DNA of 64,000 nt, taken from the NCBI GenBank assembly GCA_965644315.1, contig CBFFRQ010000042.1:186001-250000 (forward strand), read 5' to 3'. This document shows, in pieces, positions 54,663 through 63,442 of the stretch. The stretch is from Caecitellus pseudoparvulus (lineage: Eukaryota > Protista > Bigyra: Bicosoecida). How positions within the stretch are numbered: the first letter of the stretch is position 1; every line of letters begins with the position of its first letter. Under the pieces are notes generated by a model. That model did no database searches and was not told the origin of the DNA. It saw only the letters and a program-made list of their open reading frames with translations. The translations under genes and the position numbers were made by a program.

Positions 54663-57600
54663 ATGCAAGTGGCCACAGCGACTGCTGCCGACGTCAGCTA
54701 CTATACCGATTTCGTAGGCCTCTCACATGAACCTGAAGGAGGTTCGTCTTCCGCATGTGGCGCAGGCCGGTCGCCTGAGCTGCAGGCGCGTGAGCTACTG
54801 GCCGTGCCAAGCAACTCTGCCTTTGAGCAAGGTCTTGTCGGTACGACGCCCACGGATGCGGCATTGTATGAAGGGGGGAGTTCAAGAGGGACAGCCTCTC
54901 CATCTCACGCGCTTGACTTGGCTCTGGAAGACGCAGCAACCGTGGACTGGGCCACTCGCCTTCACGACATCATGCAGCTGCCGGCCGAAGACTCCACCTC
55001 CACACTCGAGAAGGCACAGCAGCTGCACCGCTTACATTGCGAGTTTAGCCATGTTTGCGCTGTAATTTGTCGCCAGATCATTCAGCAGCTTGGTCAAGCC
55101 AGGGAATCTTGGCGCATTCAGCCAGACAGTGCCGCGGGAGGCATCGCTGGAGGGGAAAAGTACTTGGCAGGCAACATTTTCATCAAGTTCGCGAGAGATT
55201 CGGGGGTGTATGGGGGTGACGATGGCGCCAGTAAGGCTGCGAGGCAAGAGCTGTGCGCTCTGCGAAGCTTGCTGACAGCGTCAGTGCCTGGGCTCTCGCT
55301 GCCCCTCATGGCTACGGTGGATGTGGGTGGATTCCGCCTTGTGTGTGCCAGCAAGCTCCCTCTCACGGGAGAGTCGCTCGTTTATGGCAGTGCAGATGCC
55401 GGTAAGACTGTCCACACGGATGATGCTGAGTTCAATAGGATCATGCGAACTGTCTGTGAGCAGCTCGGGCTAGCAGGGCACAACGTTGGCAGGCCTCGTG
55501 TTGACTCCCATGGCCAGCTGCAGCACACAGTGAAGCTGCTGTGGGGGCCAGTTGACATTGAAGGTCACAGACTGCACATGCGGTCTACATGCGAGGATGC
55601 TGCTGCCTGCAGGCGGTATGTCCTGGACACTGCCCGTTTGTTCCCGCCCATGTCTCAGTCTGACCTGCCGAACCACCCCCGGGTGCCAATGAGCACTTTC
55701 CCAGCAGATGAAGCGAAGGCTGTGCACCAGACGTTTGCTTTTAGTCGCTCAAGAGGCAATTGGGCCTTGGCCTCGAGCCGTGGCCAGCAAAAGTCTCTGC
55801 TCACGCGTGTCAAGGAGGAACTCTTGTCCTGCCTGGCTCAGGACACCGTGACCGCCATCCGTGCCCGACTTGCAGCACCTGCTCAAGGTGCCAAAGAGGC
55901 TGAAGAGGAGCACTTGCACGAAGAAGACCTCATAAAGGTGCTCCCCGTGCGCCGCCAGGTCGTTTCCGAGGGTTGGCTGTTCTCACTCCCCAGGGCACTG
56001 GCAGAGGAGGTGCAAGACGCTCGCGACATGGGAGCAAACTCGAGGGTCGCACAGCACTGCGGTATGGACATCACTGGGCCAGCTGTCCTCGTCCAAGACG
56101 TAGGCACTGTGTTTTTCCGGCTCTTCCGCCCAGAAATCCTCTCCCAGTCGGCTCTTGCTTTGTCCTCTGACGTGTTCACTGGATTCGGGGCATGCGGCGA
56201 TTGCTCCTCCTTGCGATGCGCGCATGGAAGCCGCCCTGACTTTGGCAAGGCACGACAACTCACGATAGCATTGTTGCAATGTGTTCTTCCGGCACTTGCT
56301 GCTGATATTTGCAGTGGTGGGGTGCTACTCCCGGACTCCGCTTCCCTGGTTCGGGTGATGCACAAGCGAGGGGTGCCTCTTTGCCTGCTTGGTGAGCTGC
56401 TCCTTCGTGCCCTCACGGAGTGGAACGAACAAGGCCCAAAGCCAGATGACTCGGGTGAGTCTTTGTGGTTTAGGCAGGTGATTCACACGGAAATGTTGGC
56501 CCGGTGCCTCAAGAGTCTGCTCAAGCGGCGAATGCGTCGAGCCGTGCTGTCATGCTCAGACTCGGTAGACGAAGCCATTGGACGGTGCACTGTCGACTTC
56601 TTGGCTGAGGCCTTCCTGCAGCCTGTCAGTTGTGAATCTCGTGGTGCTGGCCATGCAGGCCAAGATTTCTGGGAAGTTGTGCGATTCGAAGGTGAACGGA
56701 AATTTGGCACCTGGGCTTGCTGCCGCGACTGGCCCAGCATGGCCAGCGCTGGCACAATTGCAGACTTTCTGCCCCATGCCACCCCGAAGGGCATGCTATT
56801 CAGTCGGCTGGCGGAGCTGCTGCACCTGAACCATGCACACCCTGCCTTCCAACTTCTGCTTGACCATGCCGCGGGGGAAGGGCCAAGTGTAGGACCCTCA
56901 TTGCCTGTGCAACAAGTTCTTCAGGGCGCCCTGCAAGCCATCGAAGAATCTGACACCCCCATCTTGTTTCCAAAGGTCAAGTCAATGTTTGACGCAGACT
57001 TGATGATGGATGTGGTGCAGTCCCACATCCGGTGTGAGCGGGGGGGGTCTGGCGCCGCTGTTGCAGCAGATGCAGCGAACCAAAGTGCTCGAGACGTGTT
57101 AGCGCTTGCACTCGATAGTTTTCGAGCAACTGATCGGTCCATGCGCCTCATTCTGGCTGATCCGAGTGCCATAGCGCCCCGGGCAGTCTTTTGGGGTGGC
57201 CGCTCGATGCAGCTGGGCAGTCCTGCGGAGGAACGGCTTGTATTTGTTGCCCTCAGGCAGCTGGTGCAAGCTGCCCTGCGGAGCCGAGACTTAGCTATGG
57301 CCTCCAGCGTGGCCACTACGCTTGCGAAAGGTACGAGTTCTGTCAAGGTTCTCAGTGTCGCGCAGTGCGGTCGACTGGCCACGCTTGCCAAGTGTCAGGC
57401 GGCCACTGGACACCCGGATCTTGCCATCAACACTGTCAAGACAGCCATGCTTCACCTACAGCGGCTTGCACCTGTGCACCCTCTTCTTGGTCAACTCAAT
57501 TGCACGCTGGCTCAGGCAATGCTAGAGCACCCCAGTCCACGGGGGCGAGCCCTTGCAGCGGTCGCAGTGGATGATGCATTCAAAACGTTCCATGCGCTCT

Positions 57601-59339
57601 ACGGCACCGCCGTGCGGATTGCAGTCCAGAAGTCAGCAACATCCCGTGCGGTCTCGTCCATTGATGTCTTGATTCCGCTGATCCTTATGGGCTGTGCTGA
57701 CCAGGTCGGGGAATACCTCGGGGGCCTTGTCGCTTCCATGACCAGCGTCAGCCAAGGGTCCACAACACCAGACGTCACCCCACCGGCTCCAAGTCGCAGG
57801 TCCGTCGACCGCTTCCTTGATAGTCGTGATGCTGGAAACTTGGAAGTACTCGATCAGCCTTGCCTGTGGAGAGCCGAGGCGAGAAGCGCCTTCAGCAACC
57901 ACGACATTCCACCCGAACCCAGTTTGAGCGTCGCTGGTAGCGGACAAGCTGCCCCCCTCCATTTACCACCCCAAGCACAACCCCTTGCTCGGCAAGTGAC
58001 ATCGTCTCTCAGCATGCTTGACTCGCTTGATGAGCCTAAGCCTGGGCAGACAGCTGTGAATCCCATGGAGGCCGACGCTGCGACGAGGTGCATTCAAAGA
58101 TCGGTCGCGAGCATGCGCGTGTTAGAGCAGTTCTTGGGCCTTGAGAACGGGTATTTTGACCAGGTCTCAACGTCGGACCAGTCAATTGTCTTGTCTTCCG
58201 CGCGGCAGAGCATGGTAGCGAGCGCCCCGACCTCGTCAGCTGCAACCCCTGAGGCTACCTTTCAAGTTCACATGCCAGCCTGCCCAATCAGCGCTGGTAC
58301 CATGATTGCCGTTGTCATCCATGGAATTGACGCAAGACGGCTGACGTGTGTTGCCACTCGTGGCGTACATGTTCACGAAGCGTTCGTAGAAGCAACGCAA
58401 GAGCTGCGGTGCACGGCCTCCTTTCGCCTCGTGAAAGCCGGGGAATATACCGTGCGCATCTTCACCACATCCGACGCAGGCCAACCCTTGCAGGTGTACG
58501 AAGGTGCACTGAATGTTGTGCCTGGGGCCATTGACTCTGAAATGTGCACATTCGAAGCCCCGAGCACCGTAGAGGAAGGAGATGAATTGCTGGCCCGTGT
58601 CATCGTGAGGGACAGCTTTGGGAACATCAGGTCGGACCCAGAAGACGCCTTGCAGCTGAGTTGGAGGGCTGGGTTTGGAAGAGACAAGACTGTCGACATG
58701 GACTTTGTTGAAGACCTGCCGGTCGAAGGGGCCATCAAGCACAACACTCGGTTCGCGTGGAGAGCTGCAGCTGCAGGATGTGCTGAGGCAGCTCCAGGCA
58801 AGGTTGCCCCTGCACATTGCAGTGCGGTCTCTCTCCTTGAAGGAAAGACACACCCCAGTAGTGCACGTGTGCAGCTTGAAGATGTGGAGCCCGCTTGCTT
58901 TGCCTGGCGCTGTGTACTGCTAGCTGATGTAGTAGTTGGCAAGGTGTCTCTGACTTGGACAGCTAGGGGGGCCAGGTACAGGGACCATGGCGCTCCATAC
59001 CACACTCTCACAGTACGCAGGAACCCTGCAGCGCATTCAAGGTACTGTGGGCAGCGCATCACGATGTCCATCGGCGGGGGTGCGATCCCTGCAAAAGTCT
59101 GCCAAACCTGCACCCTCAGCTTGGGGAACACTTGCCTCCGGTGCAGTGGACGAGTATTTCATGGAGGGCGACACCTTCTGCTGTGTCAGTTTTGTGCACG
59201 GTCTCATCAGATTGGCATGAACCAACGCTGCTGCGTGTGCAAGGGCTGTATAATGCCGGCCACTCCAAGCAGTGATGCGAAAGAGTGTCAAGCATGTGCA
59301 AGGCGCCAGCATCTGCAAACCTGCATTGGTCTCAAGTAG
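54663..59339 (+). CDS. CLU (clustered mitochondria)-domain protein with CLU-central region, TPR-like helices, filamin-type Ig repeat and C-terminal PHF5-like zinc domain
   Basis: CLU motifs GGIAGGEKY...IFIKFARD...ASKAARQEL, PLMATVDVGGFRL, LVYGSADAGKTV, GPVDIEGH and RYVLDTARLFPP. Central MHKRGV...LGEL and EMLARCLK. Filamin-like VVPGAID...VIVRDSFGN. Terminal C + 5xCxxC + C. Confidence 0.88.
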   Translation: MQVATATAADVSYYTDFVGLSHEPEGGSSSACGAGRSPELQARELLAVPSNSAFEQGLVGTTPTDAALYEGGSSRGTASPSHALDLALEDAATVDWATRLHDIMQLPAEDSTSTLEKAQQLHRLHCEFSHVCAVICRQIIQQLGQARESWRIQPDSAAGGIAGGEKYLAGNIFIKFARDSGVYGGDDGASKAARQELCALRSLLTASVPGLSLPLMATVDVGGFRLVCASKLPLTGESLVYGSADAGKTVHTDDAEFNRIMRTVCEQLGLAGHNVGRPRVDSHGQLQHTVKLLWGPVDIEGHRLHMRSTCEDAAACRRYVLDTARLFPPMSQSDLPNHPRVPMSTFPADEAKAVHQTFAFSRSRGNWALASSRGQQKSLLTRVKEELLSCLAQDTVTAIRARLAAPAQGAKEAEEEHLHEEDLIKVLPVRRQVVSEGWLFSLPRALAEEVQDARDMGANSRVAQHCGMDITGPAVLVQDVGTVFFRLFRPEILSQSALALSSDVFTGFGACGDCSSLRCAHGSRPDFGKARQLTIALLQCVLPALAADICSGGVLLPDSASLVRVMHKRGVPLCLLGELLLRALTEWNEQGPKPDDSGESLWFRQVIHTEMLARCLKSLLKRRMRRAVLSCSDSVDEAIGRCTVDFLAEAFLQPVSCESRGAGHAGQDFWEVVRFEGERKFGTWACCRDWPSMASAGTIADFLPHATPKGMLFSRLAELLHLNHAHPAFQLLLDHAAGEGPSVGPSLPVQQVLQGALQAIEESDTPILFPKVKSMFDADLMMDVVQSHIRCERGGSGAAVAADAANQSARDVLALALDSFRATDRSMRLILADPSAIAPRAVFWGGRSMQLGSPAEERLVFVALRQLVQAALRSRDLAMASSVATTLAKGTSSVKVLSVAQCGRLATLAKCQAATGHPDLAINTVKTAMLHLQRLAPVHPLLGQLNCTLAQAMLEHPSPRGRALAAVAVDDAFKTFHALYGTAVRIAVQKSATSRAVSSIDVLIPLILMGCADQVGEYLGGLVASMTSVSQGSTTPDVTPPAPSRRSVDRFLDSRDAGNLEVLDQPCLWRAEARSAFSNHDIPPEPSLSVAGSGQAAPLHLPPQAQPLARQVTSSLSMLDSLDEPKPGQTAVNPMEADAATRCIQRSVASMRVLEQFLGLENGYFDQVSTSDQSIVLSSARQSMVASAPTSSAATPEATFQVHMPACPISAGTMIAVVIHGIDARRLTCVATRGVHVHEAFVEATQELRCTASFRLVKAGEYTVRIFTTSDAGQPLQVYEGALNVVPGAIDSEMCTFEAPSTVEEGDELLARVIVRDSFGNIRSDPEDALQLSWRAGFGRDKTVDMDFVEDLPVEGAIKHNTRFAWRAAAAGCAEAAPGKVAPAHCSAVSLLEGKTHPSSARVQLEDVEPACFAWRCVLLADVVVGKVSLTWTARGARYRDHGAPYHTLTVRRNPAAHSRYCGQRITMSIGGGAIPAKVCQTCTLSLGNTCLRCSGRVFHGGRHLLLCQFCARSHQIGMNQRCCVCKGCIMPATPSSDAKECQACARRQHLQTCIGLK

Positions 59340-59348
59340 GCTCCCGAG

Positions 59349-62300
59349 TCATTCCTGAGCCGCTGTTTGTGAGCCAGCTCCATCGGGCAACTGGCTGCCT
59401 TGCTGGCGCTTTCGGGCCAACACGGCGGTAGCGATGGAAATGATCGCAGCTTGAGACTGAGCGTCCTTCGCAGCCATGCTGTACATGCGAGCCAGCTTCT
59501 TCACAGGCGCTCTTGCGTTTGCTTGAAGGCCCAGCAATTTCCGAGCTCTGGACATTGAGTCCAAAGACCCCAGGCTGTCTTGTCTGCCGAGAAGCGCTGT
59601 GCCTCTGGTGGCCTTTCGGCTTGTGCCGGATTCACGGGGCTTCGCGGGCAATGGTGCGGAAGTGCGAGGCGCATCTTCGTCAGAGGATGATTCATCCCCC
59701 TCTTCGATCGCGTCTAGGTGTGCGGGGGTCATAGAGTGTGTCACAGATGATGCAGACAAGGACCGATCCATGCGGGACAAAAGAGAAACAGCTGCCTCAA
59801 GCTTTGCACTTTCCTCTTCCTCAGTTTGTGCTGTCAGGTCATGTGGGTCCTTGGCTACTGCAAGGTCGTCGCTACCCTTACCTTCAACTCTTGGCGATGG
59901 GGCAGGTGTGCCTTTTTGTGAAGTACCCGCCTCCTCAGGAGGGCGGAGCGCTGGCGCTGGTGCAGCAAGTGGGGCCTCTGAGCCGATGGCTTCATCAGCC
60001 TTCTTGCCTGATTCAGATTCAGTTGCCTCACTCACTGAGTCCCTGGCTCGCTTTACATGCACGGTATCAGCGCCCGCAATAGGCCCTCCTGCAGCTGGGG
60101 GAGTTTCAAGTGAACTCTCACACTCAAGCTCCGCATGCGGCGCTGCTGTACGCGATTCTGAGTTTTCCTGGCGCATTAGTGTAATTTGTGACTCAACAGT
60201 CGGGCAGTCCGTCGAGTCATGGGCTGGCTCAGCAAGCCTTGGCACTGGTTCCGCTGCAGGGCAGGCAGCAGCGGTGGGAAGAAGTGTGTGTTGCACGTCA
60301 ACCTCTTGCTCCTCCTCGCGTGATTGCGTTGTCTCCAGTTTCGTGTCGCACGTCTCTTTACCAGCGCTACCCAGACCGTCTTCGGACGCGCTGAACCTCT
60401 GTAATTGCACTGACTCTGAGGGTGCCAGCTGCAGTGGGCTGGTTCCTGCATGAGTTGCCAAAACGCTTTCCACTGGCTCGCCCGAGGTGTCTGCTTCTTC
60501 AGGTGGACACGGATGGCTTGATGCAGGGTTCGTGGAGAAAGGGCTTGTCACACCCCCGCCGGTTGAAGGCTCAGTGCTTGCGACTTTTCCAGTCTCGGTT
60601 TCACCATGGTCACCTTCATCTGCAGCAGTGGAATGTTTTTCAGTGTAGCCAAATCCATACCGGCGATGGCCTGCTGTGAGTTTCCTCCACTCTGTGAACA
60701 TTGCAGACTGAGCCTTGGTTTGAATGATTGATGATTGTTTAGCCCTCGCGCTGGGGCTGCATGCCTCCGCTGCAGGCGAAGCTTCGCAGACTGAGCTGTC
60801 CGACTCCCGACTGCGCCGGATAGCTTCAGACATGGGGCCCAGCGTTTCGAGGAGCTCCTGTTGCGCAAATGTCAGGGGCTGAACGAGGTTTCCCTCTCCG
60901 CCTGGGCTTGCATGCGTACCACTCGAGTCCGAGCCTTGCTTTTCCATGTCCTTGGTCTTCTCCTGTACGAGTGCCAAATCAGACAAGACCTGTGCGAGAG
61001 TGGGGCTTCTAGGCCTTTGTGGAAAGCTCCCCTCTTCATCTTGTTCCTTTGCGTTGGGGCTGTGCTCGTGTGGGCTGCTTGGAGGACTGACTTGGCTGGT
61101 CGTAGTCTCCACTCTGGCTGGCAGCATGTTACCACCAGTTCCCTGGGAGGCGCTCACATACTCAGCACTCTGTGGACGACGTCCTCCCATCCATGCTCTT
61201 GATTCCAAGGCCTCTGCCTTCCGGTACAGGTTTGCAAGCTCTGCGCCCGCCGGGGACAAAGGTTTTACAGGATAAACTTGGCTGCCTACTGGACGCCTCT
61301 TCACCAAGCCATGGACCAAGCCTCGAATTGGGCCGTCCGTCACGTGCTGGGTCACTTGCTTGCCTGCATACCATGCAATGCTCTCCTGTTGTCTCGGAAC
61401 CTCCGCATACCACCCACGCTCCGCCGCCTCCCGGACTCGCTCAGCGTGGGCGTGGAGCAGTTGCACGTGCATCGGCCTGGCAGATGTCATTGATTGCGGC
61501 CGATCTGGATCGCTGGGCAGCCCAGACACGAAATGTGTCTTACTGGTCACTGGAGCTTGCCCTCTTTCGTAGCCATCTTCAACATGAGCGCTTTCTTGGT
61601 ACCGCATTGGTGTGCCTGACTTGACACGCCGCTGCTCCTTGGCAGCACCAAGCACATTCAGGGTGTCCACTCTGGAGACTTCAGTCCTTGGGTTCCAGTG
61701 AAGACAATGAGCTATGAACTCTCTGTCAGAATGGGCGGCATGAAGACGCCCCTGCAGGACAGCGCTGGAGTGCTCGCGCTGGCCGTCTTCAGCTCCGCGC
61801 GACACTTTCGGGGCGGGGGTGCAAAGGAAGTGCTGTGCGGCAAACTCTCGGTTCAAAGTGGACCCTCCTTTGAGAGCTTGTTGGGCATTCAGCTGTGCCG
61901 AGAGTGTGTCTTTTCCGAAGGGCAGGGGGTCTCCTTGGACTGCAGCTCCAGCCGCGTGTGGCTGGGCAGCCCTCCTCGCAATGTCCGCTTCGTGTTCCAG
62001 CGTCATACTCTGCATAAAATGTAAGAATTCTTCCCCATGATCTCGAGTTCGCAGAGGCTCAATCACAAGTGCCTTGGACTTCGGGGCAGGACTAGCTGAG
62101 AAAGTATGGGGAGTCTCGGGGTAGCGATTGAGCTCGCTCCCTTCACGAAACCAGTCCAGAGAGCTGCCACGGCCGGACGCAGAGGACCCAGGCTTGATGG
62201 AGTAGTCCGGGAGCTCAATGTGACGCACACCAGACCCAGGCGAAATCTTGTCTGGCCCCTGCGTTGCTGGGGCACGCAAGGGGGAAGCTGGCGAAGTAGG

Positions 62301-62978
62301 AGGCTGCCTCGTTTGTTGCTGGCCGGCAGAGCTCGCTCCGCCTCTGTGTCGAGCTGCTTGAAGGTGTAGGACTTGGTCGCCTTCCCACCTCAGGTATGAA
62401 GCTCTACGGCGTTGTGGCAGGTCTGAAGCCCCTGCCGTTGGTGTCAGCAACTGCCTATGGCGGGCACTCATCTGCGCCAGGCAGGAGCTTCCGATCACCT
62501 GCGCAGGGACCAGTGCCGCAGTGCTCCTCGCTTCCTCCTCGTGAACAAGCCAAGCTCCAGAACCTTGGTCTATGGGATGCAGAGGTGGCTCAACTGATCT
62601 CCCGTGTCTTTCGGATAGGGAAACGTCTTCTTTCACTGCAAACTCAGTATTGCTGAAGTGCCCAGGTGCCGGAGCGATTGCTGTGCCTCTGGGGAGCGGC
62701 GTGGCCTGTGGCTCTTCCATGCGCAAGTGCGAAGCCGAGGCACGCGGTTGTGGCGCTCCATCGGCAAGAATCGGGGGTGGAGGAGGAGGTGGAGGTGGTA
62801 CAGCTCTGTATGCCTGTTCTTTTCCAAGCTGCTGCCTTGAGTGGACCGGGCTCAGGCTGTGCTGTGCAGGCGAAGCGGAAGTTCCGCGGGTCACAAGTGG
62901 TGATGGGCAGGCTACGAAAGCCCTCCCGCCCAACCCAAGACCACCCTTGAAGCTATCGAATGTAGGTGTGGGGTCCAT
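59349..62978 (-). CDS. Large, mostly disordered hypothetical protein (P/S/E-rich); start uncertain
   Basis: Uninterrupted ORF of more than 1200 codons with a poly-Pro tract, an acidic stretch and a short internal duplicated motif. ATG 62978 (MDPTP) preferred over the upstream GTG. Confidence 0.7.
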   Translation of the reverse strand: MDPTPTFDSFKGGLGLGGRAFVACPSPLVTRGTSASPAQHSLSPVHSRQQLGKEQAYRAVPPPPPPPPPILADGAPQPRASASHLRMEEPQATPLPRGTAIAPAPGHFSNTEFAVKEDVSLSERHGRSVEPPLHPIDQGSGAWLVHEEEARSTAALVPAQVIGSSCLAQMSARHRQLLTPTAGASDLPQRRRASYLRWEGDQVLHLQAARHRGGASSAGQQQTRQPPTSPASPLRAPATQGPDKISPGSGVRHIELPDYSIKPGSSASGRGSSLDWFREGSELNRYPETPHTFSASPAPKSKALVIEPLRTRDHGEEFLHFMQSMTLEHEADIARRAAQPHAAGAAVQGDPLPFGKDTLSAQLNAQQALKGGSTLNREFAAQHFLCTPAPKVSRGAEDGQREHSSAVLQGRLHAAHSDREFIAHCLHWNPRTEVSRVDTLNVLGAAKEQRRVKSGTPMRYQESAHVEDGYERGQAPVTSKTHFVSGLPSDPDRPQSMTSARPMHVQLLHAHAERVREAAERGWYAEVPRQQESIAWYAGKQVTQHVTDGPIRGLVHGLVKRRPVGSQVYPVKPLSPAGAELANLYRKAEALESRAWMGGRRPQSAEYVSASQGTGGNMLPARVETTTSQVSPPSSPHEHSPNAKEQDEEGSFPQRPRSPTLAQVLSDLALVQEKTKDMEKQGSDSSGTHASPGGEGNLVQPLTFAQQELLETLGPMSEAIRRSRESDSSVCEASPAAEACSPSARAKQSSIIQTKAQSAMFTEWRKLTAGHRRYGFGYTEKHSTAADEGDHGETETGKVASTEPSTGGGVTSPFSTNPASSHPCPPEEADTSGEPVESVLATHAGTSPLQLAPSESVQLQRFSASEDGLGSAGKETCDTKLETTQSREEEQEVDVQHTLLPTAAACPAAEPVPRLAEPAHDSTDCPTVESQITLMRQENSESRTAAPHAELECESSLETPPAAGGPIAGADTVHVKRARDSVSEATESESGKKADEAIGSEAPLAAPAPALRPPEEAGTSQKGTPAPSPRVEGKGSDDLAVAKDPHDLTAQTEEEESAKLEAAVSLLSRMDRSLSASSVTHSMTPAHLDAIEEGDESSSDEDAPRTSAPLPAKPRESGTSRKATRGTALLGRQDSLGSLDSMSRARKLLGLQANARAPVKKLARMYSMAAKDAQSQAAIISIATAVLARKRQQGSQLPDGAGSQTAAQE

Positions 62979-63442
62979 GAGATTGGAAAGCACTCGCGCG
63001 TGTGGATCCTGACGCAAGCAGCCTTGGGGCAGCAAAGCGTACAGGCAGCAGCTTCCTTGCACAGGCGATGAAACGCGGGGTCTGCTATGTGCCACACACA
63101 ACTGTTCAGTGCGCAGCACGGCGTAGGAAGCAGTCTGAAAAGGACAGTAGCTTGTAGCTGGTGGGTTGACCCGGGTCTCGAGCTGCTGATGTGGCCAGTT
63201 CAGCTCATTGCTGCCCATCATCGTTCCAGGCACAGAAAGTCAAGAGCAGCGCATACACTGCACTGCTGCCAGGCACGGAGCGTCTAACTCGCGGTGTACA
63301 CGGATGCGGGCACAGACGGCAACAGAGCAGCTGGAGCGCCAGCGGGTACACGCAAAACCAAGAACGATCCCACTACTCCCACAGAGTGCCTTGGGATACC
63401 TTGCCCTGTTCAAGTGAATCAGCGTGCTGCTTACACTGGAGC

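What the first reader, a model, noticed from the sequence alone, without database searches (positions are those of the whole stretch)
59043..59339. CLU-domain protein ending in a complete PHF5A/Rds3-type triple-zinc knot
Seen: the last ~98 aa read YCGQ...KVCQTC...NTCLRC...LLCQFC...QRCCVC...SDAKECQAC...QTC, that is one Cys, five CxxC and one Cys. Known: this is the 12-ligand pattern of PHF5A/Rds3 (SF3b subunit, triquetra knot), and local matches are close (RCVIC vs RCCVC, SDAYYCKEC vs SDAKECQAC). PHF5 is normally a small stand-alone spliceosomal protein, while CLU proteins are RNA-binding/translation-associated. Inference: a PHF5 fold recruited as a module of a CLU/TPR/filamin protein, possibly a non-spliceosomal RNA- or HEAT-protein-binding system. 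I know of no description of this architecture.
Basis: partly seen in the sequence, partly recalled or inferred. Interest (0 to 1): 0.8.

Follow-up and report, generated by a model that had tools for sequence, protein, structure and literature searches.

The report
CLU protein with PHF5-like zinc tail
One of eleven CLU-family proteins of a marine stramenopile protist ends in a conserved 12-cysteine, probably three-zinc module whose cysteine layout matches the spliceosomal knot protein PHF5A, but no independent test here shows that it shares that knotted fold or descent.

Summary
Window 54663-59339 (+) is one 1558-aa open frame. It has a Pfam CLU domain, a weak eIF3_p135 match, an Ig-like stretch, and a 98-aa tail reading C, five CxxC, C.

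The tail is real and under selection. Three other proteins carry it at the end of a CLU protein: one near-identical, one syntenic at 34% identity, one non-syntenic. All 12 Cys are invariant in them.

It is rare. A search of 1.84 billion representative proteins found only this small family, and the genome holds one copy.

Membership of PHF5/Rds3 is not shown:
- The Pfam PHF5 model hits none of the tails.
- The tail profile does not hit PHF5A among solved structures or the genome's own intron-split PHF5 gene.
- Profile-profile comparison gives 29% probability, with all five CxxC in register.
- 4 of 200 cysteine-fixed shuffles reach that score.
- AlphaFold failed on the family alone (pLDDT 38). 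It gave a PHF5A-like model (TM 0.56-0.72) only when PHF5 rows were added, and then in one of five models.

Verdict: a new C-terminal zinc module on a lineage-specific CLU paralogue. I put a PHF5-like fold at about 45-50%. The scan's notes list this same stretch once more, as my own finding re-read.

The parts
54663..59339 (+). Whole gene: a single uninterrupted 1558-codon ORF plus stop, a CLU-family paralogue
   Evidence: ORF list and translation. Same length and 98-99% identity in metagenome protein P0001. Full-length collinear alignment with the 1622-aa syntenic orthologue P0122.
54945..55649 (+). CLU (clustered mitochondria) domain, residues 95-329
   Evidence: Pfam PF13236, E 6.5e-40, 137.7 bits against a 24-bit cut-off. 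This is the best-conserved region against P0122, at 51% identity.
56334..56543 (+). Partial eIF3_p135 / CLU central domain, residues 558-627
   Evidence: Pfam PF12807, E 4.2e-05, 24.1 bits against a 22-bit cut-off.
58230..59027 (+). Probable beta-rich, Ig/filamin-like region, residues 1190-1455, directly before the zinc tail
   Evidence: Conserved G-x-Y-x-V ... P-G-x-x-D ... R-D-x-x-x-N pattern in alignment A6. Pfam Filamin reaches only E 0.1 in one orthologue, and there is no PDB sequence hit. The label is therefore tentative.
59043..59336 (+). C-terminal 12-Cys module, residues 1461-1558: C1462, C1480/1483, C1491/1494, C1508/1511, C1523/1526, C1542/1545, C1554. Presumed to bind three Zn.
   Evidence: Translation. 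The 12 Cys are invariant in three other proteins, two of them divergent. They align in register with the 12 PHF5 ligands in MAFFT and hhalign. A metatranscriptome contig covers 58948-59149 collinearly.

Best explanation
The gene encodes a lineage-specific paralogue of the CLU (clustered-mitochondria / TIF31 / CLUH) family. It keeps the CLU and central domains, has no Pfam-detectable TPR end like the canonical copies, and instead carries an Ig-like stretch and a roughly 95-residue C-terminal module.

Shown: the module is translated as part of the CLU protein. It is conserved in three divergent marine protist lineages with 12 invariant cysteines in the formula C, 5 x CxxC, C.

Inferred: the 12 Cys bind three structural Zn ions. 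The most likely wiring is the interleaved PHF5A/Rds3 scheme: CxxC 1+4, CxxC 2+5, and CxxC 3 plus the two lone Cys. That would give a compact, possibly knotted module, perhaps derived from the organism's PHF5 gene.

Inferred function: this genome has 11 CLU-domain genes with different C-terminal ends (TPR, SUFU+UIM, or none recognised). The zinc tail is therefore most likely the docking module that gives this paralogue its own protein or RNA partner on a shared CLU scaffold. It is not an SF3b subunit. The canonical PHF5 is encoded elsewhere, and the tail lacks PHF5's C-terminal stem and basic end.
For: - One ORF with CLU and eIF3_p135.
- The same CLU-plus-tail architecture occurs in P0001, P0122 (syntenic: giant HECT ligase, CLU, orphan, ATP-synthase-alpha paralogue) and P0125 (non-syntenic).
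- All 12 Cys are invariant. Tail identity to P0122 is 34%, against 25% in the preceding region.
- PHF5A ligand wiring and formula come from PMC5458519.
- MAFFT places all 12 Cys of the tails and of PHF5 in the same columns from end to end.
- hhalign aligns 60 columns with all five CxxC in register, P 5.8e-4.
- Only 4 of 200 shuffles with the Cys columns fixed reach that score, and the reversed tail scores 13.8 against 25.7.
- BLASTP against the organism's own PHF5 exon gives a local RCCVC...SDA..C..C match, E 0.022.
- The hybrid-alignment AlphaFold model (pLDDT 67, pTM 0.58) matches PHF5A/Rds3 chains at TM 0.56-0.72, and nothing else scores above 0.27.
- There are 11 CLU loci with different C-terminal domains, and canonical CLU+TPR copies are present. 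CLU paralogues with RCC1, FYVE/ankyrin, MORN/PH, C2 or LRR/UBC modules occur in other protists.
Against: - Pfam PHF5 hits no tail at E<=10.
- phmmer of the tail against 1.84 billion proteins returns no PHF5.
- The tail profile misses PHF5A/Rds3 in the PDB; its best hits are the MDM2 RING at E 0.1 and the PriA Cys-rich region at 0.23. It also misses the genome's own PHF5.
- hhalign probability is only 29%.
- AlphaFold on the family's own four sequences failed, at pLDDT 37.8.
- The PHF5-like model needed PHF5 rows in the alignment, and only one of five models adopted it.
- Most PHF5 signature residues outside the Cys are absent: GDGKC, CDSxVRP, CDECNYGS, RDGCPKI and the basic tail.
- Zinc binding, the partner and the location in the cell are all untested.
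Confidence: 0.5

Rival explanations
1. The tail is a real three-zinc module but is unrelated to PHF5 and not knotted. One possible form is two consecutive treble-clef or zinc-ribbon fingers (CxxC 2+3 and CxxC 4+5) with a third site that clasps the two lone Cys to CxxC 1. Another is a C1/PHD/RING-like cross-brace with an extra site. On this reading the match to the PHF5 formula is convergence. The function would still be that of a docking module on the CLU paralogue.
For: No HMMER-level similarity to PHF5 in either direction. The tails do give sub-threshold Pfam hits to C1_1 (25.2 bits against a 26.5 cut-off in P0125, 19.4 in P0122, 14 in P0001), PHD and Prok-RING, and PDB hits to the MDM2 RING. 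These hits fall on either CxxC 2-3 or CxxC 4-5, as expected for repeated knuckle-plus-helix treble-clef units. Even the failed family-only AlphaFold model puts helices after CxxC 1, 3 and 5 and strands at CxxC 2, which fits both wirings. Loops are 1-6 residues longer than in PHF5 at five places.
Against: Every one of those hits is below its family cut-off, and they move between members. No other known family that I could name has the formula 1+2+2+2+2+2+1 with lone Cys at both ends. Non-Cys residues add to the PHF5 alignment score, with 4 of 200 shuffles reaching it.
Confidence: 0.38
2. The core of the tail (CxxC 2, 3 and 4) is an MDM2/IAP-type RING finger. The protein would then be a CLU-scaffolded ubiquitin ligase, with the other Cys forming accessory knuckles.
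For: The best PDB profile hits are MDM2 RING domains (E about 0.1). The alignment runs C-L-R-C ... F-H-G-G-x-H ... C-x-x-C ... C-x-V-C, and the window protein has His at both MDM2 His-ligand positions.
Against: E-values are not significant. The two His are not conserved: P0122 has F and R there, and P0125 keeps only one. A RING site 2 therefore has no conserved third and fourth ligands. No Pfam RING family hits any tail apart from Prok-RING_1 at E 0.096 in one member.
Confidence: 0.07
3. The Cys-rich end is not a functional domain. It would be a chance Cys-rich read-through, or sequence that belongs to or is constrained by the convergent neighbouring gene.
For: The neighbour's stop codon lies only 9 bases beyond this gene's stop, and a possible poly(A) hexamer for the neighbour lies inside the last codons. 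dN/dS against the 98% identical copy is uninformative for the tail, with 3 synonymous and 4 non-synonymous changes.
Against: All 12 Cys and the frame are kept in lineages at 34-36% identity, including a non-syntenic one with different neighbours. The tail is better conserved than the region before it.
Confidence: 0.03

Closest known systems
PHF5A / Rds3 (Pfam PF03660), the SF3b subunit with a three-zinc trefoil ('triquetra') knot
   Same: Twelve Cys in the same formula and order: lone C, five CxxC, lone C. The size is similar, and all 12 align in register from end to end. There are a few shared local residues: a hydrophobic residue before the first Cys, [KR]-[VL]-C before CxxC 1, RCxVC, and D-A before CxxC 5. 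The sequence is compatible with the fold when threaded through a hybrid alignment.
   Different: - No HMM-level similarity.
- Loops are 1-6 residues longer at five places.
- It ends 4 residues after the last Cys, so it lacks PHF5's C-terminal stem strand and basic tail.
- It lacks nearly all invariant PHF5 non-Cys residues.
- It is a C-terminal module of a 1558-aa CLU protein, not a stand-alone protein of about 110 aa.
- The genome has its own canonical, intron-split PHF5.
CLU family (Clu1/TIF31, CluA, CLUH, plant FRIENDLY/REC)
   Same: CLU domain at 137.7 bits and a partial eIF3_p135 central domain, in the usual order.
   Different: - No Pfam-detectable TPR region.
- The C-terminus is replaced by an Ig-like stretch plus a zinc module.
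- It is one of 11 CLU-domain genes in the genome.
- Canonical CLU+eIF3_p135+TPR copies are elsewhere, at C67 about 604-607 kb and on C32.
Cross-braced binuclear treble-clef fingers (C1, PHD, MDM2-type RING)
   Same: CxxC pairs alternate between knuckle and helix. The spacings of 13-15 residues are typical of these domains. There are sub-threshold hits to C1_1, PHD and MDM2 RING.
   Different: The tail has twelve ligands rather than eight and no conserved His ligands. The hits fall below the cut-offs and land on different parts of the tail in different members.

Membership tests
PHF5/Rds3 (PF03660) | Sequence matches the family profile above its curated cut-off (26.7 bits) | tested here: not met
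   No PF03660 hit for the whole protein or for any of the four tails, even at E<=10. A six-frame genome search with PF03660 finds only the canonical gene on C13.
PHF5/Rds3 (PF03660) | Twelve Cys ligands as lone C, five CxxC, lone C, in that order | tested here: met
   The formula is as described for PHF5A in PMC5458519.
PHF5/Rds3 (PF03660) | Three Zn wired CxxC 1+4, CxxC 2+5, CxxC 3 plus both lone Cys, giving a left-handed trefoil knot | tested here: inconclusive
   AlphaFold on the family alone gave pLDDT 37.8. With PHF5 rows added, one of five models reached pLDDT 67 and matched PHF5A at TM 0.56-0.72. That result is biased by construction. Metal content and ligand pairing cannot be tested with these tools.
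PHF5/Rds3 (PF03660) | Invariant non-Cys signature (GDGKC, CDSxVRP, CDECNYGS, SDAYYC, RDGCPKI) and the basic C-terminal stem | tested here: not met
   Alignment A5: only D-A before CxxC 5 is nearly invariant across both groups. The tail ends 4 residues after the last Cys.
PHF5/Rds3 (PF03660) | Stand-alone protein of about 110 aa serving as an SF3b subunit | tested here: not met
   It is the C-terminal module of a 1558-aa protein. A separate canonical PHF5 is present. SF3b association cannot be tested here.
CLU family (PF13236) | CLU domain above its cut-off | tested here: met
   137.7 bits against 24, E 6.5e-40.
CLU family (PF13236) | Central eIF3_p135 domain followed by C-terminal TPR repeats | tested here: inconclusive
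   eIF3_p135 is partial, at 24.1 against 22 bits, covering profile positions 6-67 of 171. No TPR family hit at E<=1. Paralogues in the same genome do show TPR.
RING finger (MDM2/IAP type) | Eight conserved Cys/His ligands in a cross-brace, including ligands 3 and 4 between the first two CxxC of the finger | tested here: not met
   The His at those positions are not conserved in P0122 or P0125. The PDB hits have E about 0.1.
Filamin/ABP280 repeat (PF00630) | Profile match above its cut-off in the region before the tail | tested here: inconclusive
   Only E 0.1 in one of four members, and no PDB sequence hit. The motif pattern is suggestive by eye.

The most novel reading that the evidence does not exclude
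The tail is a true PHF5A/Rds3-type trefoil-knotted three-zinc domain, descended from the spliceosomal PHF5 gene and recruited as the C-terminal docking module of a non-spliceosomal CLU scaffold. It would be the first example of this fold outside SF3b. PMC5458519 reports Rds3 as the only other protein with that fold in the PDB.
Probability: 0.45. Interest if true: 0.7.

Novelty: new variant of a known kind. Interest (0 to 1): 0.45.

Why it matters
PHF5A/Rds3 is known only as a small, extremely conserved, stand-alone spliceosome subunit. Its knotted three-zinc fold has no reported relatives. A diverged copy working as a module of a CLU-type protein would show three things. The knot can tolerate loop insertions and loss of its stem. 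It can be reused outside splicing. It would also offer a natural system for studying how a zinc knot folds when tethered to a large protein. Whatever the fold turns out to be, the finding shows that some marine protists have expanded the CLU family. This genome has 11 genes with different C-terminal ends. That suggests a shared CLU scaffold directed to different partners, which bears on the still unclear molecular role of CLU proteins.

Tried and rejected
- Pfam scan of the whole protein and of the tails for PHF5: nothing. One search failed on a frame slip and was corrected.
- PDB sequence search with the tail and with its profile: only non-significant Dmf1, DnaJ-CR, MDM2 RING and PriA hits.
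- ESM Atlas feature search of the tail: best score 0.76, below the useful range.
- Word-based homologue search of residues 1200-1558: only P0001.
- Exhaustive phmmer search: P0001, P0122 and two low-complexity repeat proteins (P0123, P0124). I rejected those two as spurious after reading them.
- Metagenome locus scan with the tail profile: only the P0122 contig.
- AlphaFold on the four-sequence family alignment: unusable, pLDDT 37.8.
- Hybrid alignment with PHF5 rows: PHF5A-like in one of five models. I count this as compatibility only.
- First PHF5 alignment (A1) was unusable. Most public gene models found with the middle exon are intron read-throughs. I rebuilt it from natural full or partial pieces.
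- The genome's own PHF5 was searched by reference to the open frame around its middle exon only.
- dN/dS against the 98% identical copy has too few changes in the tail to say anything.
- RNA support is thin. It rests on short Logan contigs from one metatranscriptome and three runs of uncertain type. None spans the gene, and there are no joints.
Full report
**What is there**

It is the in-frame end of one uninterrupted ORF, 54663-59339 on the + strand, 1558 aa.

Pfam finds a strong CLU domain (residues 95-329, E 6.5e-40). It also finds a partial eIF3_p135 central domain (residues 558-627, 24.1 bits against a 22-bit cut-off) and nothing else at E<=1.

The tail holds 14 Cys in 98 residues (14.3%), against 2.6% in the rest of the protein. 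Five of the protein's six CxxC motifs lie in it.

The genome (G000, 30.6 Mb, about 60% G+C) is called a marine stramenopile protist in earlier notes of this scan. I did not test that assignment. Public runs holding the stretch are mostly marine metagenomes.

**Is it real and conserved**

Three other proteins carry the same architecture:
- P0001 is 98-99% identical and 1558 aa, on a metagenome scaffold with the same neighbours.
- P0122 is 1622 aa, 34% identical and collinear over the full length. It lies in the same gene order: giant HECT ligase, CLU gene, an orphan protein of about 1100-1290 aa on the other strand, then an ATP-synthase-alpha paralogue.
- P0125 is 1880 aa and comes from a different gene neighbourhood.

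In the tail alignment (A3) the 12 Cys at 1462, 1480/1483, 1491/1494, 1508/1511, 1523/1526, 1542/1545 and 1554 are invariant. Overall tail identity to P0122 and P0125 is only 34-36%. Cys 1529 is Ser in P0001, and Cys 1524 is not kept either. The conserved set is therefore exactly C, 5 x CxxC, C.

The tail (34% identity to P0122) is better conserved than the preceding 265 residues (25%).

A contig from a marine metatranscriptome lies collinearly on 58948-59149, across the start of the tail, with no joint. That is weak evidence of transcription and says nothing about the full transcript.

**How rare is it**

- An exhaustive phmmer search of the last 119 residues against 1.84 billion representative proteins returned only P0001, P0122 and two low-complexity repeat proteins that are clearly spurious.
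- A metagenome scan with the tail profile found only the P0122 contig.
- The tail profile finds only itself in the organism's own genome.
- The next-closest CLU proteins (P0126, P0131 and others) have no Cys-rich end.

**Is it a PHF5/Rds3 domain**

Evidence for:
- PHF5A has five CXXC motifs and two lone Cys binding three Zn. They are wired CXXC 1+4, CXXC 2+5, and CXXC 3 plus the lone Cys, in a trefoil knot. Its authors found only Rds3 with that fold in the PDB (PMC5458519).
- The tail has the same formula in the same order.
- MAFFT places all 12 Cys of the tails and of natural PHF5 pieces in common columns from end to end, with 22-29% identity.
- hhalign aligns 60 columns with all five CxxC in register, P 5.8e-4.
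- I shuffled the non-Cys columns while fixing the 12 Cys columns. The score fell from 25.7 to a mean of 16.3 (sd 3.7), and 4 of 200 shuffles reached the real value. The reversed tail scores 13.8. So non-Cys residues add a modest signal.

Evidence against:
- The Pfam PHF5 model hits none of the four tails even at E<=10, and phmmer found no PHF5.
- The tail profile does not find PHF5A or Rds3 among PDB sequences. The MDM2 RING (E about 0.1) and the PriA Cys-rich region lead the list.
- The tail profile does not find the genome's own PHF5.
- hhalign probability is 29%.
- Most invariant PHF5 residues are absent.
- The protein ends four residues after the last Cys, so PHF5's C-terminal stem and basic tail are missing.

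**Structure prediction**

AlphaFold2 on the four-sequence family alignment failed, at mean pLDDT 37.8. No more natural relatives could be found, so I used the second job on a hybrid alignment of tails plus PHF5 pieces.
- One of five models reached pLDDT 67 and pTM 0.58. The other four stayed at 31-35.
- That one model matches PHF5A/Rds3 chains at TM 0.56-0.72 (rmsd 2.7-3.4 A over about 100 columns). The next fold scores below 0.27.
- In the ESM Atlas it matches only a PHF5 cluster.

Because PHF5 rows were in the input, this shows compatibility and is not independent evidence. The fold question stays open. I put a PHF5-like wiring at about 45-50%.

**Rival wirings**

The tails give sub-threshold Pfam hits to C1_1 (25.2 bits against a 26.5 cut-off in P0125; 19.4 and 14 bits in P0122 and P0001), PHD and a prokaryotic RING family. 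These hits land on CxxC 2-3 in one member and on CxxC 4-5 in others. That is what repeated knuckle-plus-helix treble-clef units would give. It is compatible with a sequential, unknotted arrangement as well as with PHF5's interleaved one.

A true MDM2-type RING is unlikely. The two His that would be ligands are not conserved.

**Context**

- A canonical PHF5 gene exists separately on contig C13. It is split by introns into several short exons, and the middle exon scores 79.7 bits against a 26.7-bit cut-off. I searched it only by reference to the open frame around that exon and did not join exons.
- The genome has 11 CLU-domain loci. They include canonical CLU+eIF3_p135+TPR copies, two large paralogues with a SUFU domain (one also with a UIM), and several with no recognised C-terminal domain. 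None of the others has a Cys-rich end.
- In other protists, CLU paralogues carry RCC1, FYVE+ankyrin, MORN+PH, C2 or LRR+UBC modules.

The most economical reading is a shared CLU scaffold with swapped C-terminal partner-binding modules, of which this zinc tail is one.

**Other labels**

The 'filamin' label for residues of about 1190-1455 is plausible by eye. It is not supported by Pfam (E 0.1 in one member) or by PDB sequence search. No TPR was detected.

**Literature**

I found no paper describing a PHF5 domain inside a larger protein, or a CLU protein with a zinc module. This search covers open-access text only.

**Verdict**

- Observation: confirmed.
- Interpretation: partly supported.
- The architecture is a new variant within the CLU family, restricted so far to a few uncultured marine protists.
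- PHF5 family membership fails the profile test.
- A PHF5-like fold remains a live possibility of roughly even odds, and a structure or metal-ligand map would settle it.

Noticed in passing
G000 loci L010-L031 (for example C67:123120-131191 = L030:1120-9192, and C59 = L024:1329-8705): The genome holds 11 CLU-domain loci. Two very large paralogues (2691 and at least 2459 aa) combine CLU with a C-terminal SUFU domain, and one also has a UIM. Canonical CLU+eIF3_p135+TPR copies are at C67 about 604-607 kb and on C32. This looks like a CLU paralogue expansion with swapped C-terminal modules.
   Followed up: partly
window 59322-59349: The convergent neighbour (ORF 59349-63233, minus strand) stops 9 bases after this gene's stop. 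The only AATGCA hexamer nearby is on the minus strand at 59322-59327, inside the last codons of the zinc tail. If so, the neighbour's 3' end overlaps this gene's coding end. No AATGCA or AATAAA follows this gene on the + strand within about 860 bases.
   Followed up: partly
L004/L005/L006 against window 30909-64000: The gene order giant HECT ligase, CLU-zinc gene, orphan of about 1100-1290 aa, ATP-synthase-alpha paralogue is kept in a relative whose CLU protein is only 34% identical. That is strong synteny at deep divergence.
   Followed up: no
L001:1340-2001 (G000:C13 about 447130-447790, minus strand): The organism's canonical PHF5 gene is split into several very short exons. It reads RCCVC at the fourth CxxC, the same doubled Cys as the window's CLU tail.
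   Followed up: partly
proteins P0002-P0121: Most public PHF5 gene models retrieved with the middle exon are mis-predicted. They show intron read-through, exon duplication or missing first and last exons. Only a handful cover all 12 Cys.
   Followed up: no
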